Source of the DNA: Guillardia theta CCMP2712
Lineage: Eukaryota > Protista > Cryptophyta
Assembly (NCBI RefSeq): GCF_000315625.1
Contig: NW_005434605.1
Span: 300,407-364,406 of the forward strand
Direction of reading: 5' to 3'
Length of the DNA stretch: 64,000 bases
In this document: one piece after another, positions 40,832 to 50,555 of the stretch
How positions within the stretch are numbered: position 1 is the first letter of the stretch
How the letters are laid out: the number at the start of each line of letters is the position of its first letter
The notes under the pieces: generated by a model
What the model saw: the letters and a program-made list of their open reading frames with translations, nothing else
What the model was told of the DNA's origin: nothing
The model's database searches: none
Position numbers and translations under genes: made by a program

Positions 40832-40931
40832 NNNNNNNNNNNNNNNNNNNNNNNNNNNNNNNNNNNNNNNNNNNNNNNNNNNNNNNNNNNNNNNNNNNNN
40901 NNNNNNNNNNNNNNNNNNNNNNNNNNNNNNN
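40832..40931. other. Assembly gap (N)
   Basis: Run of N. Confidence 1.
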
Positions 40932-43149: not shown

Positions 43150-45763
43150 ATGGATCCCATCGCCAAGATCAAAGAGGAGTACGAGGCTAGGAAACGAAAG
43201 CTGCAGGAGATTGCTACCACTGCCGTGCCGAACGAGGGGACCGAGAAGAAAAAGAAAGTATATTTAACGAAAGGGCAAGCCAAGAAACTACTGTAAGTTG
43301 TTTGAGATGATATTTTTCCGAAGTGCGCTAGCGCTTATGCTATTTCATCTCTGACAGGGAACAATCAACTTCATCGCAAACACAGGAAAGCAGCGACAGC
43401 GCCAACAAAGAATCAGCATCAGCCGACTCACAGCAACTTGAAAACGGGGGTGGGCAAACCACAAAGAAATGGATCCCGAAGGAAGAGGTGGTGCGCAGGC
43501 TCAGGGCGCTGAGGGCGCCTATCACGATCTTTGGAGAAAATGACGAGGAAAGGATCATCCGTTTGAGGAAACTGGAGCTTTCTCGTCCAGATGAGGAGGA
43601 GGAGACACGGGGGCAGAAGAACTTCCTCCTGGAGGAGAAGAAACGAGAGAAGGAGAAGCTTCTGGAGGGAGATTCATCGGCGGAGGACGAGCTGACACCA
43701 GAGCAGAAGCGAGAGAAGAAGATGAATCGTTTGCAGAAGTACGTCCCTCTTGCTCTTCACTTGCATCCTCACTCTTGCTTCGTCAGACTGAGATCCAGGG
43801 AAGACGAAGCCTTGAAGTCGCAGAACAAGCATGACCTGATCAGCACTTGGCTGCGGCGCTGCCTCAAGGAATGGGAGATTGACATCGACGATCTGCCAGA
43901 TGAGGTGAGTTGGCATGCTCTTGTATGACGGCTGACTTGAGCTGCAGTTCTCCAAGACCGTGAAAGGGCGGCAGGAGATCAACACGTTCAAGCAGACTAA
44001 GGTACGCAGAATGTGTGGCTCCGTGGGCATGTCCCTTGTGTTGACTTGATTCATGGCAGATTTACTTGAAGCCTTTGTTCAAGATGCTCAAGACAAGAAG
44101 TTTGGAAGGAGATATCCTGGTGAGAGATGCTTCTTCGGTTCTACAGCATGAGGACATTTCATGCCCTTCACATTCCCATCTCGATCCTCCGCCTTCTCCT
44201 GACCTCCTTCTGCCCGAACCCTTCTGTTCATGGACCATGACTGTTCCACATGCCAGGAACGTCTCGGAGAGATCATCAAATGGTGCCGAAGACGTGAGTA
44301 CACCAAGGCGGCGGACGAATACCTCCTCCTGTCCATCGGCAAGGCGGTGATGCTACCACGTGCTATCTCCTCGTCTTGACGAGCATCAAGGCCTGGCCCA
44401 TGGGAGTGACCATGGTTGGTATCCACGAGCGCTCAGCAAGAGAGAAGATCTTCTCTCAGGTGAGCTCTCGGGATTGCGCGCGGGGTGCGTGGGGTGGGGG
44501 GGGGTCTGAGAGCCGGGGTGGCAGGACGTGGCCCACATCCTCAACGATGAGACTCAGAGGAAGTTCATCCAGTCGGTCAAGCGCCTCATGACTTACAGCC
44601 AGAACAAGTACCCCCCAGCAGCTTCACCAAGGCCATCGAGCCCACCTGCATCGACCAGCACGCCCCGAGCTACCTTCGAGAGGTGACAGCCCTGCAGTCC
44701 TCTCCCAGCCCTCCCCCTCCCCCNNNNNNNNNNNNNNNNNNNNNNNNNNNNNNNNNNNNNNNNNNNNNNNNNNNNNNNNNNNNNNNNNNNNNNNNNNNNN
44801 NNNNNNNNNNNNNNNNNNNNNNNNNNNNNNNNNNNNNNNNNNNNNNNNNNNNNNNNNNNNNNNNNNNNNNNNNNNNNNNNNNNNNNNNNNNNNNNNNNNN
44901 NNNNNNNNNNNNNNNNNNNNNNNNNNNNNNNNNNNNNNNNNNNNNNNNNNNNNNNNNNNNNNNNNNNNNNNNNNNNNNNNNNNNNNNNNNNNNNNNNNNN
45001 NNNNNNNNNNNNNNNNNNNNNNNNNNNNNNNNNNNNNNNNNNNNNNNNNNNNNNNNNNNNNNNNNNNNNNNNNNNNNNNNNNNNNNNNNNNNNNNNNNNN
45101 NNNNNNNNNNNNNNNNNNNNNNNNNNNNNNNNNNNNNNNNNNNNNNNNNNNNNNNNNNNNNNNNNNNNNNNNNNNNNNNNNNNNNNNNNNNNNNNNNNNN
45201 NNNNNNNNNNNNNNNNNNNNNNNNNNNNNNNNNNNNNNNNNNNNNNNNNNNNNNNNNNNNNNNNNNNNNNNNNNNNNNNNNNNNNNNNNNNNNNNNNNNN
45301 NNNNNNNNNNNNNNNNNNNNNNNNNNNNNNNNNNNNNNNNNNNNNNNNNNNNNNNNNNNNNNNNNNNNNNNNNNNNNNNNNNNNNNNNNNNNNNNNNNNN
45401 NNNNNNNNNNNNNNNNNNNNNNNNNNNNNNNNNNNNNNNNNNNNNNNNNNNNNNNNNNNNNNNNNNNNNNNNNNNNNNNNNNNNNNNNNNNNNNNNNNNN
45501 NNNNNNNNNNNNNNNNNNNNNNNNNNNNNNNNNNNNNNNNNNNNNNNNNNNNNNNNNNNNNNNNNNNNNNNNNNNNNNNNNNNNNNNNNNNNNNNNNNNN
45601 NNNNNNNNNNNNNNNNNNNNNNNNNNNNNNNNNNNNNNNCCCAGCCGCCATCCCCGCTCTGCTCCCCCCGCTCTCTCCATAGCCAGCTAGGAGAAGGACG
45701 ATGCCAAATGACATGCTCCTGCAGATTGGCAAGATCGAGGCAGAGGGGATCTGGAAGAAGTGA
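43150..45763 (+). CDS. PRP18: Pre-mRNA splicing factor PRP18, multi-exon; last exon probably beyond the gap
   Basis: [18 protein letters not shown] (PRP4-like motif), [19 protein letters not shown]|[43 protein letters not shown]. Confidence 0.92.
44724..45639. other. Assembly gap (N)
   Basis: Run of N. Confidence 1.
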
Positions 45764-45990: not shown

Positions 45991-46235
45991 CCCCGCCTCG
46001 CTGCTCCTTCCAAGGAACGGCATTTCCTAGTTTTCCTCCCAACAAAAAAATTCCAACTGACCGCTTGCCTTCCCCCACCCTCCGCCCCCTGCCTCCCGCT
46101 CCCCATCCCGACGCCCCCCTCCCCCTCTGCTACCTTCTCCTGTCCTGTCTCTGACTACCTCGCCTGACCTACACCTCTTCCTCACCTGCTGCCTGCTTGC
46201 TCTGCTCTCCCCGCCTTCTCTCCCTTCTCCCCCTC

Positions 46236-47303
46236 ATGTCGTGGGGAGGGAACAAGCCAAGCATGGCGGGAGCTGCCACGAAAGCTTTCCGAGAAGGGGA
46301 TACGCAGAAGCTGAGAGAGGTCCTCTCGTCCAGCGACGACATCTCCTTCCTCTCCAACAGCCCCGAGCCTCTTGCGTGCCTGGCCGCTCGACAAGGAGCC
46401 ATCGACATGCTGGATGTGATCCTAGGAGTGGACCCATGGAGCGCCATCGCCATGGACGCAAGCTTTCGCACGCCCCTGCATCATGCGTGCATGCACGGCC
46501 ATAGGGAGGCGGCGCGGATGCTGCTGGAGCGGAAGCCGGCGAGGGTGGCATGCGGCATCATGATGAAGCAGCAGGACGACTTCAAGGTGCTGGTCCTGCC
46601 TCCCCTCCCCATGCTCTGTGCTGAGTGAGATGGTTTCCAGATGACGCCGATCACATGTGCCATCCTCTCAGGCAGGGAGGAGGTGGTGGAGGACATGCTG
46701 GAGGCTGGCTCCTTCTCGGGCGTCGACCTCCCCACCAAGGATGGGCTGTTCCCTCTGCAGCTGGCATGCAGCAAGGGCATGCCGCGAGTGCTGTCGAGCC
46801 TCTGCTCGCAGCCGCATGGGAAGGATCTGGCGCAGAAGCTGGACAAGGATGGGTTCTCCCTCCTCCACCGAGCTGTGATGGAGGGCCACAACAACATCGC
46901 CAAGATGCTGCTGGAGGAGAAGCTCTGCCCTCCTGCCCTCCTCGACGCCTCGGGCACCTCCGCCATGGAGCTCGCGGTCAGCCTGGGGCACGTGGATGCT
47001 GCCTGGATGATGCACAGCTTCGTGCCGCTAGAGGTGGCGCGGGAGAGCATGAGAGACCTGCTGCAGCGCAAGATCGAAGAGGAGACGAGGAGTATGTTTG
47101 GGTGTGAAGTGGCCTCTTTCGAAGTGAGCGCGTACCAGGAGGGGGAGCTGGTGGAGGAGGTCTGCACGGGGGTGAAGGAAGGGGAGGTTTGGATGGCAGT
47201 GCTGAACATATTCCCGCACGGGCAGGACAGTCTGATGCAGATCGATGTGAGTGTGGAGGAGGAGGAGTATCTCCTAGTGGTAGCGCGGACTTACCGCGGG
47301 TGA
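46236..47303 (+). CDS. Ankyrin-repeat protein (2 exons)
   Basis: RTPLHHACMHGHREAARMLLE, MTPITCAILSG, LFPLQLACSKG and FSLLHRAVMEGHNNIAKMLLE. Confidence 0.9.
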
Positions 47304-47521
47304 GGACAAAGGAATGAGCCCCCAAACTCCGCAAGAGGCCTCCTCCTCCTCCTCCTCCTCCTCCCCTTGTGCTTCCTCCTCCCTCGGGCTCAGAGGCTCG
47401 TGCTCTTGTTCTAGCTTATACAGACCTCGACATCCTGCTCTACGGTGAAAGGAACTTTTATTGCTGCTCGTCACCTTGCTCCGACATCGTCCGCCTCCCC
47501 CGCCCCCCAGCTCCTCCCTGA

Positions 47522-49008
47522 TCAGACGACCTGGGACAGGAACTCTTTCCTCCGGGCCAGGAACGTGTCGCGGATGTAGGAGCAGGAGGGGATCACTCTC
47601 ATCGACCTCGCAGAGCAGTACTCGAAGGCAGCGACACAGAGCTTCTCTGCTATTCCCCTCCCTCTGAGAGCAGAGGGAGTGAAGGTATGCTCCATGTCCA
47701 TAACCGTCTTCCCGTCCTTCTTCCTCAGCCTGTAGGTCAGGAGGGGTGCATCCTCGCTGCTGGCCCCAGGGACGAGCATCACGAACCTGCTGCTCTCTGG
47801 CTCATGCCGGATGCCGTCAGGAGACGAGGAGGCGGCGCCTGCCTCCTGGCATGCTGCCTCCGTCTCTCCCTGCTCCCCCTCCCCGTCCTCCGGTGAAAGA
47901 GCCGTGAAGATGGGTGAGTGGTCGCTCCCGAAGAAGCTCTCCCTTTTCCTGCCCCTCCCGACCACGCAGCTCTCCCTCACCCGCTTGCCGAGGCTCGTGG
48001 ACAGCAGGCAGTAGTCTATCCTCATCCCCCGGTTGTGATACTTGTCCGTCAGGTGCGCTGACCCCGCCACGTCCATGCAGGATCGTCCGAGGATGTGAAC
48101 TCCTCAGGGCTGTGCAAGAGGCGGAAGGCGTCCACCAGCGATCCCTCCTCCAGCACCTGGCTGAACCTCTCCTGCTCGTTGGCTGTGAAGCCAGGCTGAC
48201 CCGCATCGCCGCTCGAGGGCTTCGCTGCCGATCGATCGCGATCGTTCCTCTGCGACCGGAAGAAGTCCGGATGAGTGACATCACAGTCCTTGTGTGCCAC
48301 GTTCATGTCCCCCACCCACGCGACCTCCATCCCCCGCTCCCTGCATGTCCTCACGAAGCTCAGCAGCCTCGTGTCCCACTCTCGCCTCTTGGCGAAGTTG
48401 CTCTCCTCCTTCCATCCATTGTTGGGTGCATACGTGTTCACCACAAGCAGCTCCTTCCCATCGTCCTTCACGAACTTCGCCATGCAGACTCTCCCGTTCT
48501 CGTCGTGCTCCTGCCCGAGGTCCAGGTTGTAGTGGAACGACACAGGTTTCCTGATGCCTTTGCGGATCATCAACGCAGTTCCTGCATACCTCCAGTCAGC
48601 GAGGGACCACCTAACGACATAGTTGCTGAGGGGCTCCTTTCTGAGCGCGCTCGCCACCAGCTCAAGCTCCTCCTTACACTCCTTTTCGTTGTCACGAGGA
48701 GAGCCTCGATCGCGCTTCCTCCCATCCCCGCGCTTGGAACCAGGAGGAGCTGACGCGACCATCCTGACCTCTTGCAGCGCGATGACGTCAGGCTCGAGCT
48801 TGAGGACGAGGTCACAAAACCCTCTCATGTTCTCCTCCTCTTTGCATCGGTTCACCAGACTGTTGGCGTTCCAGGAGAGGAAGGAGCGAGGAAGTCTACC
48901 TGAGGATGCTGACGATGTATCGCTCTCTTCCACCTCTTCCTCTCTCCTCCTCTTCTGCTCCTCCTCCCTCGCCTCCCCATCGCCCGCTCGCTTTAGGAAC
49001 TTAAGCAT
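47522..49008 (-). CDS. APE1L/ExoIII-family AP endonuclease fused to a C-terminal small GNAT (YjdJ/NATD1-like) domain; 1-nt frameshift at ~48062-48065
   Basis: LSWNANSL, PDVIALQEVR, YAGTALM, NTYAPNNG, WVGDMNVAH, PGFTANEQERF, LVDAFR, WTWRG/GMRIDY and GSDHSPI, then MDMEHTFTPSALRGRGIAEKLC..VIPSCSYI. Confidence 0.88.
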
Positions 49009-49325
49009 GTTGGATCCTGTAAATTTCCTGTGATACTCCATGGTGATTAAAACGCTGGTTATATTTTGATGTTTATTGACTGTAATTTGAAATTTTAAAG
49101 AAATATTGTATAATCCATCGTTTACATGAGGTTCAATTTGACCCTCTGGCGGTCTCAGGACACGGTATAAAGGAGGACCAGTAGCGACGCAGGTGAGCAA
49201 GGACTGGTGAGAGAGGGAGGAGGTGGGGGGAGGAGGACGAGGAGGACGAGGAGGACGAGGAGGACTGGATGAGGAGGACTGAGGCAGCTACAGGCGTATG
49301 GAGAGCAGGCGATCGTAGGCATAGC

Positions 49326-50555
49326 ATGGAGACTGCACACATCTGCGTTATTGGAGATGCCTTCGTCGATATCCTCGCCTGCCCCCTCGATCGCATGCCT
49401 TCATGGGGGTCGGACGTGGATTGTCCGTCCATCTCCCAGCATCCCGGAGGATCTGCGCTGAACGTCGCCATTCACCTTGGCGAGCTCCTCCGAGGCACCC
49501 CCCACACCTGCTCTTTCTACGGGCTCGTGGGGGACGACGAGTTCGGGCGCTTCCTTCGTTCCAAGCTGGCCGACTCCAACGTTGAAGACAGGACGCAGAG
49601 CTCGGGAGACTCTGAGGCCTCGACCGGCGTCTGCATCGTCCTGTCGGGAAGCAACGACCGTGGCTTCGTCACCCACGTCGGCGCTACCAGCAAGCTAGGG
49701 GTTGGGCACCTGCAGGAGATCCTCGAGGTGGACTGCAGGAGGAAGAGGCTTCACGTGCATGTGTCAGGGTTCTACTCCTGCCCCTCCCTCCAGCAGCAGC
49801 TCCCCGCGTTCCTGGACAAGCTGAGGGAGGAGGCGAGCAGCAACTCCTGCAAGCTCACCATCTCCCTGGACACCAACGGCGACGCCTCGGACCTCTGGGA
49901 CTGCGGGGTCGCTCGGGTGCTCGAGCGCGTCGACTTCTTCCTCCCCAACGAGGTGGAGGCATCGGGAATCGCTCGGAAGCTGATGAACGAGAGCGAGGAC
50001 TGCAGCGACCAGCTCCTTGAGCTGGAACGTGCAGCCCAGTGCCTAGCGGGCAAGGTGCAGGATGCGGTCGTGATCACATGCGGGAAGGAAGGCTGCATCT
50101 CCCAAACAAGGACAGGAGCAGGCGCTAGCGCTCCTCCCACCCGATGGAGCGCTCCGTCGGGGATAGTACCTGTAGACGCTACAGGAGCTGGTAAGGTAAA
50201 GACTCCAGCACTGTATCCTCACACCCGGTGCTGTACAGGCGACGCGTTTGACGCGGGATTCATCTACAGCATGGTGGTCAGCGGAGGTGACTAGGGAGGC
50301 GCAGAGGACTGAAAGCTCGGGAAGGAGCTGACGGTGTTGCTGGTCGCAGGCTCCTTAGCCAACGCCATCCAGGCGGGGTCCTGCACTGGAGCTTACTGCA
50401 CACAGCACAAGGGAGCAAACTCTCGTCCGGTGAGACCAGCGGAGGGAGCGGCAGAAGGAGACGTTGACATGTTGTCGATGATATGTAACGGGTTGCTGCA
50501 GATGTCGAGCTCACAACTTGCGGAGATGGTGCAGGAGAAGTTCAAGGCATGTTGA
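49326..50555 (+). CDS. PfkB-family carbohydrate kinase
   Basis: VIGDAFVDI, PGGSALNVA, GLVGDDEFGRFL, VDFFLPNEVEA, VITCGKEG and VDATGAG|DAFDAGF. Confidence 0.92.

What the first reader, a model, noticed from the sequence alone, without database searches (positions are those of the whole stretch)
47522..49008. AP endonuclease (APE1L/ExoIII type) fused to a small GNAT acetyltransferase
Seen: after the final catalytic motif GSDHSPI (~47926-47906) the frame continues with no stop or evident intron. An acidic ~25-aa linker leads into a complete ~95-aa domain (IRHEPESSRFVM..LLTYR..MDMEHTFTPSALRGRGIAEKLC..AFEY..VIPSCSYIRDTFL). Knowledge: HT-x-x-P-x3-RGxGxA plus P-x-C-S-Y defines the YjdJ/NATD1 (Acetyltransf_CG) GNATs, normally stand-alone proteins of mostly unknown substrate. 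Plant APE1L acts in base-excision repair and active DNA demethylation, and mammalian APE1 is regulated by acetylation. Inference: a Rosetta-stone fusion linking this orphan GNAT family to abasic-site repair, for example self- or chromatin-acetylation at lesions. I am not aware of this architecture being described.
Basis: partly seen in the sequence, partly recalled or inferred. Interest (0 to 1): 0.7.

Follow-up and report, generated by a model that had tools for sequence, protein, structure and literature searches.

The report
AP endonuclease fused to minimal acetyltransferase
A cryptophyte alga (Guillardia theta) encodes one 495-residue protein that joins a plant-type DNA-repair nuclease for abasic sites to a tiny acetyltransferase of an uncharacterised family; the public gene model hides this fusion, and it gives that family its first pathway clue.

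Summary
On the minus strand, the frame carrying the last ExoIII motif (GSDHSPI, 47909-47929) runs without a stop through a 30-residue acidic linker. It continues into a complete Acetyltransf_CG (PF14542) domain (47525-47812, E 1.3e-17).

Contigs of three public runs from three studies all carry one more C there. That restores a single 495-aa ORF (49008 to 47522) with no intron.

The window matches the Guillardia theta nuclear genome. The public model GUITHDRAFT_75737 stops at the false stop codon (304 aa), so it shows no fusion.

- The same architecture occurs in a Hanusia phi transcriptome protein (519 aa). Its nuclease is 81-83% identical, its GNAT 80% and its linker 48%.
- It also occurs in an unnamed eukaryote's genomic contig, and as a partial copy in a metagenome contig.
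- This is the only PF14542 locus found in the G. theta genome.
- The GNAT model (pLDDT 96) matches Arabidopsis At1g77540 (TM 0.85). The family's conserved His, Cys and CoA-loop glycines are kept.

I found no paper describing the fusion. What the GNAT acetylates is unknown; tethered acetylation of chromatin or repair proteins is an inference. The scan did not report this locus before.

The parts
47522..49008 (-). Whole coding region of the APE1L-type nuclease / GNAT fusion: 495 aa once the base missing from the window at 48061/48062 is counted. ATG at 49006-49008, stop at 47522-47524.
   Evidence: The N-terminus MLKFLKR... matches Hanusia phi P0002 and exon 1 of L009.
48061..49008 (-). ExoIII/xth nuclease domain, N-terminal part (316 aa up to WTWRG). 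It carries catalytic-motif residues in SWNAN (48862-48876), ALQEV (48766-48780), TYAPNN (48418-48435) and GDMNVAH (48292-48312).
   Evidence: PF03372 36.9 bits and TIGR00633 99.7 bits. These residues are invariant in 31-34 of 34 aligned homologues, except the motif His at 33 of 34.
48049..48065 (-). Frameshift site. The C run 48062-48065 (+ strand) is one base short in the window, which creates a false TGA at 48049-48051.
   Evidence: read laying reports 'put in behind 48061: C' in the contigs of X2, X5 and X1. Hanusia phi reads WTWRGSAHLTDKYH.
47903..48061 (-). ExoIII nuclease domain, C-terminal part: MRIDY (48011-48025) and GSDHSPI (47909-47929), the last catalytic Asp and Asp-His.
   Evidence: TIGR00633 positions 213-253 of 255. 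It aligns to the C-terminal end of solved Xth 5ewt and Arabidopsis ARP 8ka3.
47813..47902 (-). Acidic, poorly conserved linker: 30 aa here and about 49 aa in Hanusia phi.
   Evidence: 48% identity with a length change, against about 80% in both domains. pLDDT is below 50 across most of the linker (residues 386-390 and 392-420) in the Hanusia full-length model.
47525..47812 (-). Acetyltransf_CG (PF14542, COG2388, NATD1/YjdJ/At1g77540-type) minimal GNAT domain. His of EHTFTP at 47687-47689, CoA-loop RGRGIA at 47648-47665, Cys of PSCSY at 47582-47584.
   Evidence: Pfam 64.1 bits. phmmer to At1g77540 gives E 1.3e-17. AF2 pLDDT 95.9. Foldseek hits 1xmt at TM 0.85, plus 2il4, 5i0c and 1r57.
47376..47521 (-). 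Probable 3' untranslated region, at least this long.
   Evidence: Contigs of X2 and X1 run on to 47376, where the tool masks a repeat. Sixteen raw RNA reads of X23 lie at 47367-47500, with the first mate on the + strand. Assigning them to this gene rather than the ankyrin gene upstream is an inference.

Best explanation
This is one nuclear gene of Guillardia theta without introns. It encodes a 495-residue two-domain protein.

The N-terminal 370 or so residues are a complete ExoIII-family AP endonuclease of the plant APE1L type. It should cut at abasic sites and clean blocked 3' ends during base-excision repair.

A flexible acidic linker then tethers a 96-residue minimal GNAT of the At1g77540/NATD1/YjdJ family. 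That domain keeps the acetyl-CoA loop and the family's conserved His and Cys.

Shown here: the continuous ORF in reads, both domains intact, conservation of the fusion in other eukaryotes, and equal sequence constraint on both domains.

Inferred: the nuclease domain brings the weak, substrate-unspecific GNAT to abasic sites and nicks. There the GNAT uses acetyl-CoA to acetylate lysines of nearby proteins, namely histone tails, repair partners or the enzyme itself, and so couples incision to local chromatin opening or enzyme hand-off.

My odds: real expressed fusion protein about 0.9; both domains catalytically competent about 0.6; target is chromatin or repair proteins about 0.35.
For: - ORF, frames and motifs.
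- Domain calls: PF03372 and TIGR00633 plus PF14542.
- Three runs from three studies restore the frame with one C, and their contigs cross the nuclease, linker and GNAT with no joint.
- Hanusia phi transcriptome protein P0002 (519 aa, PF03372+PF14542) is collinear and reads straight through the frameshift site.
- The P0122 cluster (contig L009) has the same architecture plus an upstream exon starting MLRFLKRAGD.
- P0127 (L011) has the nuclease, a long linker and the first GNAT strands before its contig ends.
- Identity between G. theta and H. phi is 81-83% for the nuclease, 80% for the GNAT and 48% for the linker. The GNAT is therefore constrained as strongly as the nuclease.
- It is the only PF14542 locus in the 87-Mb genome, while at least four other ExoIII-type loci exist.
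- GNAT fold: pLDDT 95.9 and TM 0.85 to At1g77540, including its CoA complex 2il4.
- The residues equivalent to His41 and Cys76 are present (alignment). The Cys is in 52 of 53 rows and the loop glycines in 54 of 54 rows of A3, although the plant nuclease C-termini are misaligned onto those columns there. In the GNAT-only alignment A2, the Cys and one loop Gly are invariant.
- At1g77540 acetylates H3 and H4 in vitro, according to Tyler et al. 2006 as cited in PMC11075575.
- The same GNAT family is also fused to PARG, another single-strand-break-repair enzyme, in two divergent representatives, P0230 and P0206.
- The full-length Hanusia model shows two confident globular domains joined by a linker with pLDDT below 50.
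Against: - No assay exists of either activity.
- The RNA status of runs X2 and X5 is the tool's guess. The one certain RNA run (X23) covered only the 3' end, with 16 reads. Transcription of the whole G. theta ORF as one mRNA therefore rests on the contigs and on the Hanusia transcriptome.
- The only reported activity of the family is weak, and its natural substrate is unknown.
- PF14542 is also fused to unrelated partners: enoyl-CoA hydratase, RF-1, THUMP and HMA/MauE. Fusion partners alone do not point to one substrate.
- The GNAT of P0122 is only 39% identical and sits on a long, unresolved branch. A single origin of the fusion is not shown.
Confidence: 0.55

Rival explanations
1. The GNAT domain is not an enzyme here. 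It acts as an acetyl-CoA/CoA-binding sensor or a protein-docking module that regulates or localises the nuclease.
For: The family's only reported activity is weak. The domain is a minimal GNAT of about 95 residues, with TM 0.85 to At1g77540. It appears as an add-on to many unrelated enzymes, as a ligand-binding module might.
Against: The putative catalytic His and Cys and the CoA loop are all kept. The domain is as conserved as the nuclease. Binding and catalysis cannot be told apart by sequence.
Confidence: 0.2
2. The GNAT acts on a non-protein substrate at the lesion or in nucleotide metabolism, such as a nucleic-acid-linked amine, ADP-ribose or a small molecule, rather than on lysines of proteins.
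For: Other partners of close PF14542 relatives handle nucleic acids or nucleotide derivatives: PARG (P0230, P0206), the RF-1 peptidyl-tRNA hydrolase domain with three GNAT copies (P0121), and the THUMP RNA-binding domain (P0215). Others handle CoA esters: ECH in P0188 and P0263.
Against: No such chemistry is known for this family. The one assay reported is on histones. The partners are too diverse to single out a substrate.
Confidence: 0.15
3. The two activities are functionally unrelated. The fusion is a tolerated accident of two neighbouring genes that merely co-expresses them.
For: Eukaryotic gene fusions without pathway coupling exist (general knowledge). The linker is long, disordered and fast-evolving.
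Against: The fusion is kept across proteins only 41% identical overall. It is also kept in an organism whose neighbouring adaptor-complex gene is only 44% identical to G. theta's. No stand-alone PF14542 copy was found in G. theta.
Confidence: 0.08
4. Artefact or pseudogene. The frameshift at 48061 is real, so G. theta makes a truncated nuclease and the GNAT part is dead or a separate gene.
For: The window itself has the stop at 48049-48051. The public model P0001 ends there.
Against: All three runs covering the site have the extra C, including a DNA-type run at depth 64. The downstream frame is intact for 179 codons and 80% identical to Hanusia. A truncated protein would lack the catalytic Asp and Asp-His.
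Confidence: 0.02

Closest known systems
Land-plant APE1L-type AP endonucleases (about 360 aa; Arabidopsis APE1L processes 3'-PUA ends after ROS1, PMC7617993)
   Same: ExoIII fold profile with all catalytic motifs. There is 38-44% identity over 87-100% of the N-terminal piece at 211-228 bits, far above Arabidopsis ARP or human APE1 (42-45 bits).
   Different: The solved family members that aligned (Xth 5ewt, Arabidopsis ARP 8ka3) end 5-6 residues after the Asp-His-x-Pro motif, and the plant homologues are about 360 aa with PF03372 only. This protein continues for 126 more residues: linker plus GNAT. Orthology to At3g48425 itself was not tested with a tree.
Arabidopsis At1g77540 / human NATD1 / E. 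coli YjdJ / S. aureus 1R57 (COG2388, PF14542 minimal GNATs)
   Same: Same domain family by Pfam, PDB sequence search and fold. The CoA loop and the conserved His and Cys are kept.
   Different: Those are stand-alone proteins of about 90-105 aa. Here the domain is the C-terminal module of a DNA-repair nuclease and the only family member found in the genome.
Hanusia phi EukProt protein EP00960_P025944 (P0002)
   Same: Identical architecture, collinear, 79% identical overall and about 80-83% per domain. It is transcript-derived.
   Different: A longer linker, about 49 aa against 30 aa. It is an unannotated transcriptome entry, not a described protein.
PARG-Acetyltransf_CG fusions (P0230, 892 aa; P0206)
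   Same: The same GNAT family is joined to an enzyme of the single-strand-break and base-excision response.
   Different: The GNAT is N-terminal, the partner is a glycohydrolase and the organisms are unknown. The proteins were seen only as metagenome ORFs.
Acetylation-guided base-excision repair in other eukaryotes (IDM histone acetyltransferase complex with ROS1 in plants, PMC7617993; acetylation of mammalian APE1, my own knowledge)
   Same: Functional pairing of protein acetylation with BER enzymes.
   Different: There the acetyltransferase is a separate protein from other GNAT families. No fusion is involved and no PF14542 member is implicated.

Membership tests
ExoIII/xth AP endonuclease family (PF03372, TIGR00633) | Profile match above the curated cut-off | tested here: met
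   PF03372 scores 36.9 bits against 24.5. TIGR00633 scores 99.7 bits against 99.05 for the N-terminal piece alone. The C-terminal piece adds profile positions 213-253.
ExoIII/xth AP endonuclease family (PF03372, TIGR00633) | Catalytic residues: Asn, Glu, Tyr, Asp-x-Asn, His, Asp and Asp-His in the family motifs | tested here: met
   SWNAN, ALQEV, TYAPNN and GDMNVAH are invariant or nearly so in 34 homologues. MRIDY and GSDHSPI align to the same motifs of solved Xth and Arabidopsis ARP. Mapping to human APE1 numbering rests on my own knowledge.
ExoIII/xth AP endonuclease family (PF03372, TIGR00633) | Uninterrupted reading frame through the domain | tested here: met
   Not met in the window as given, which has a stop at 48049-48051. 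Met in the contigs of three runs that carry one more C at 48061/48062.
ExoIII/xth AP endonuclease family (PF03372, TIGR00633) | AP-site incision or 3'-end cleaning activity | not testable with these tools
   Needs recombinant protein.
Plant APE1L subgroup | Closer to the APE1L paralogue than to ARP/APE1 or APE2 | tested here: inconclusive
   Indirect evidence only. Land-plant proteins of about 360 aa score 211-228 bits, whereas Arabidopsis ARP (8ka3) and human APE1 score 42-45 bits. No tree with At3g48425 was built, because no labelled sequence was on hand.
Acetyltransf_CG / COG2388 minimal GNAT (PF14542) | Profile match above the gathering score | tested here: met
   64.1 bits against 30, covering profile positions 2-77 of 80. 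The genome six-frame search gave 65.8 bits.
Acetyltransf_CG / COG2388 minimal GNAT (PF14542) | Minimal GNAT fold as in At1g77540 and YjdJ | tested here: met
   AF2 pLDDT 95.9. Foldseek gives 1xmt at TM 0.85, 2il4 at 0.80, 5i0c at 0.78 and 1r57 at 0.72.
Acetyltransf_CG / COG2388 minimal GNAT (PF14542) | Acetyl-CoA loop (R/Q-x-x-G-x-G/A) and the family's conserved His and Cys (His41 and Cys76 of At1g77540, per my recollection of Tyler et al. 2006) | tested here: met
   LRGRGIA, EHTFTP and PSCSY align to At1g77540 KRGLGLA, VHTYVP and PSCSY. The Cys and one loop Gly are invariant, and the other Gly is nearly invariant, in 47 GNAT sequences.
Acetyltransf_CG / COG2388 minimal GNAT (PF14542) | Acetyl transfer from acetyl-CoA | not testable with these tools
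   Needs an enzyme assay.

The most novel reading that the evidence does not exclude
The eukaryotic NATD1/At1g77540 family of minimal GNATs, which includes uncharacterised human NATD1, is a dedicated acetyltransferase of the base-excision and single-strand-break repair pathway. It has been captured by that pathway's enzymes, APE1L in cryptophytes and other protists and PARG elsewhere. In these fusions it acetylates chromatin or repair factors at the nick. If the P0122 fusion arose independently, the coupling evolved more than once.
Probability: 0.2. Interest if true: 0.75.

Novelty: new variant of a known kind. Interest (0 to 1): 0.55.

Why it matters
PF14542 proteins occur from bacteria to humans (YjdJ, At1g77540, NATD1). 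They have solved structures but no known substrate or pathway.

A conserved fusion to an AP endonuclease, in an organism with no stand-alone copy, gives a concrete and testable pathway hypothesis: acetylation coupled to abasic-site or nick processing. Fusions of the same family to PARG point the same way.

The finding also corrects the reference. The G. theta assembly lacks one base here, and the public protein (304 aa) lacks two catalytic motifs and the whole GNAT. Domain-architecture databases built on that proteome therefore cannot show the fusion.

Tried and rejected
- **Tiny intron at the frame change.** The only GT..AG candidate (22 nt, about 48041-48062) has the wrong phase, and no run shows a joint. 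Rejected in favour of a missing base.
- **Pseudogene reading.** Rejected.
- **Word search with the GNAT region of P0002 among 285-908-aa proteins.** It found only P0002 itself. That search is insensitive, because P0122 was missed, so it does not prove rarity.
- **ESM Atlas look-ups.** P0002 residues 320-519 gave no usable hit. For P0230 only ordinary PARG clusters came up, at a score of 0.77.
- **GNAT-domain tree of 47 sequences.** G. theta and Hanusia pair at 100/99 support. P0122 sits on a long branch of 1.63 in an unresolved position, so single versus repeated origin is not settled.
- **Naming the organisms behind L009 and L011.** Paper searches for the run and metagenome identifiers found nothing. 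The adaptor-subunit gene next to the fusion on L009 is only 44% identical to its best G. theta match, so that organism is not a close relative.
- **Raw RNA run X23.** Only about 6% of it was read, and 16 reads landed at 47367-47500. That says nothing about the linker.
- **Alignment A3, used for the full-length fold.** It misplaced the C-termini of the plant nucleases onto the GNAT columns. I use the full-length model only for the domain/linker confidence pattern.
- The pieces were searched apart and the intact Hanusia protein served as a stand-in. Read laying skipped simple repeats at 47300-47375 and 49212-49300.

Full report
**What is in the sequence**

The feature lies on the minus strand. 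Mechanical ORF listing and the sequence itself show two overlapping frames.

- Frame A runs from the ATG at 49008 to a TGA at 48049-48051. It is 319 aa and ends ...DDPAWTWRGQRT*.
- Frame B spans 47522-48076 (184 aa).

Frame B carries MRIDY (48011-48025) and GSDHSPI (47909-47929).

Pfam and NCBIfam assign the pieces as follows.
- Frame A matches PF03372 and TIGR00633 (xth) at profile positions 49-199.
- The start of frame B matches xth positions 213-253 of 255.
- The end of frame B matches PF14542 Acetyltransf_CG (64.1 bits, cut-off 30, E 1.3e-17).

**The frame change is an assembly fault**

The closest database protein is Guillardia theta CCMP2712 GUITHDRAFT_75737 (P0001, 304 aa). This identifies the window as G. 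theta nuclear DNA.

That model ends at the TGA. It also skips 15 residues (48211-48255) as an intron.

The next hit is a Hanusia phi transcriptome protein from EukProt (P0002, 519 aa, PF03372+PF14542). It keeps those 15 residues and reads ...WTWRGSAHLTDKYHNRGMRIDY... straight through. Reproducing that reading needs one more G in the minus-strand G run.

I laid four public runs on 47300-49300. The contigs of X2, X5 and X1 come from three studies; X1 is DNA-type at depth 64.5 and may be the source strain. Each shows exactly one difference from the window: a C put in behind + strand 48061. No joint appears anywhere between 47376 and 49000.

With that base the gene is one 495-codon ORF. I did not build the joined sequence for any tool. 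The pieces were searched separately and P0002 served as the intact stand-in.

The RNA nature of X2 and X5 is the tool's guess. The one certain RNA run (X23) gave only 16 reads, all at 47367-47500, just beyond the stop codon.

**Both domains look functional**

*Nuclease.* The residues in SWNAN, ALQEV, TYAPNN and GDMNVAH are invariant or nearly so across 34 homologues. MRIDY and GSDHSPI align to the equivalent motifs at the very end of solved Xth (5ewt) and Arabidopsis ARP (8ka3), which stop 5-6 residues later.

Land-plant AP endonucleases of about 360 aa score 211-228 bits. Arabidopsis ARP and human APE1 score only 42-45 bits. This places the nuclease with the plant paralogue that is neither ARP nor the much longer APE2, so it is APE1L-like. 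That inference is indirect; I built no labelled tree.

*GNAT.* phmmer against the PDB finds At1g77540 (E 1.3e-17), S. aureus 1R57 and E. coli YjdJ. An AlphaFold model built on 47 homologues has pLDDT 95.9. It superposes on At1g77540 (1xmt, TM 0.85), on its CoA complex (2il4) and on YjdJ (5i0c).

The CoA-loop glycines and the Cys of PSCSY are invariant or nearly so in the family alignment. The His of HTFTP aligns with His41 of At1g77540. My recollection of Tyler et al. 2006 is that His41 and Cys76 were proposed as mechanistically important. The paper itself was not held. PMC11075575 cites it for in vitro acetylation of H3 and H4.

**Conservation of the fusion**

| Segment | Identity, G. theta vs H. 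phi |
|---|---|
| Nuclease | 81-83% |
| GNAT | 80% |
| Linker | 48%, with a length change from 30 to about 49 aa |

A full-length model of the Hanusia protein shows two confident globular parts joined by a segment with pLDDT below 50 at 386-420. The underlying alignment was imperfect.

The exhaustive HMMER search with the C-terminal 179 residues and follow-up Pfam scans gave two more cases.

- **P0122** (416 aa; three cluster members from Logan and ENA assemblies) carries PF03372 plus PF14542. Its contig L009 also holds an upstream exon that starts MLRFLKRAGD and carries the N-terminal nuclease motifs, so the gene there has intron(s).
- **P0127** (L011, a JGI metagenome) has the nuclease, a linker of about 190 aa and the first GNAT strands before the contig ends.

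P0122's nearest named relative is the Hanusia protein, at 41% identity. The gene next to it is only 44% identical to its G. theta counterpart. The fusion is therefore kept over a large evolutionary distance, although the organisms are unnamed.

A tree of the GNAT domain could not say whether the fusion arose once.

In G. theta the fused copy is the only PF14542 match in 87 Mb. At least four other ExoIII-type loci exist.

**How it probably works**

Shown: one ORF, two intact domains, a flexible tether, and joint conservation.

Established for relatives: APE1L removes 3'-blocking ends in plant base-excision repair and demethylation, where a histone acetyltransferase complex also takes part (PMC7617993). 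At1g77540 acetylates histones weakly.

Inferred: the nuclease domain concentrates a weak, low-specificity GNAT at abasic sites and nicks, where it acetylates histone tails, repair partners or the enzyme itself.

One supporting hint comes from close PF14542 relatives, which are also fused to PARG in two divergent representatives (P0230, P0206). PARG belongs to the same single-strand-break response.

There is a caution, though. The domain is also fused to enoyl-CoA hydratase, to RF-1 (with three GNAT copies), to THUMP and to HMA/MauE. It is a promiscuous module, and a non-protein substrate or a pure CoA-sensing role cannot be excluded.

**Novelty**

Both domains are known; the architecture is not described in anything I could search.

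Among proteins listed with precomputed Pfam domains, only P0002 and the P0122 cluster carry both domains. The G. theta reference proteome hides the fusion because of the missing base.

I could not query InterPro architectures. I rate this a new variant of a known kind and of moderate interest. It is a clean, conserved Rosetta-stone link for an orphan family that includes human NATD1, but it has no functional data.

I did not test it. The scan had no earlier report on this locus.

Noticed in passing
window 48049-48065 and 48211-48255: The public G. theta protein model GUITHDRAFT_75737 (P0001, 304 aa) is wrong in two ways. It ends at a false stop caused by a base missing from the assembly. It also removes 15 codons (SQRNDRDRSAAKPSS) as an intron, although Hanusia phi keeps them and no run splices them out.
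   Followed up: yes
P0230 (892 aa) and P0206 (479 aa), metagenome proteins: An Acetyltransf_CG domain is fused N-terminally to poly(ADP-ribose) glycohydrolase (PARG_cat_N/C) in two representatives less than 50% identical to each other. This is a second link between this GNAT family and single-strand-break repair.
   Followed up: partly
P0121, P0215, P0188, P0263, P0255 (metagenome proteins): Other PF14542 architectures seen among the closest relatives: an RF-1 domain plus three GNAT copies, THUMP plus GNAT, GNAT plus enoyl-CoA hydratase (twice), and HMA plus GNAT plus MauE.
   Followed up: partly
window 40832-40931 and 44724-45639: Two runs of N (assembly gaps) lie in the window, consistent with a draft assembly that can hold single-base errors.
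   Followed up: no
window 46197-47303 (+) and 49269-50294 (+): The neighbours are an ankyrin-repeat gene, read in two frames that change near 46625-46641 (an intron or another frame error), and a PfkB-family sugar kinase. The kinase is divergently oriented, about 260 bp from the fusion gene's ATG, across an A+T-rich stretch. No functional link to the fusion is evident.
   Followed up: partly
window 47300-47375 and 49212-49300: Simple trinucleotide repeats of GAG/CTC type flank the gene. The reads tool masked them, and contigs appear cut there.
   Followed up: no
runs X14, X18, X19: Freshwater and lake metagenome runs hold 9-44% of the sampled words of this stretch. This suggests a near-identical cryptophyte, or carry-over, in those samples.
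   Followed up: no
G000 C10:643551-644063, C97:251816-252388, C9:25860-26447, C5:181948-182288: At least four further ExoIII-type loci exist in the G. theta genome, and none has a PF14542 domain nearby. They are probably the APE1/ARP-like and APE2-like paralogues.
   Followed up: no
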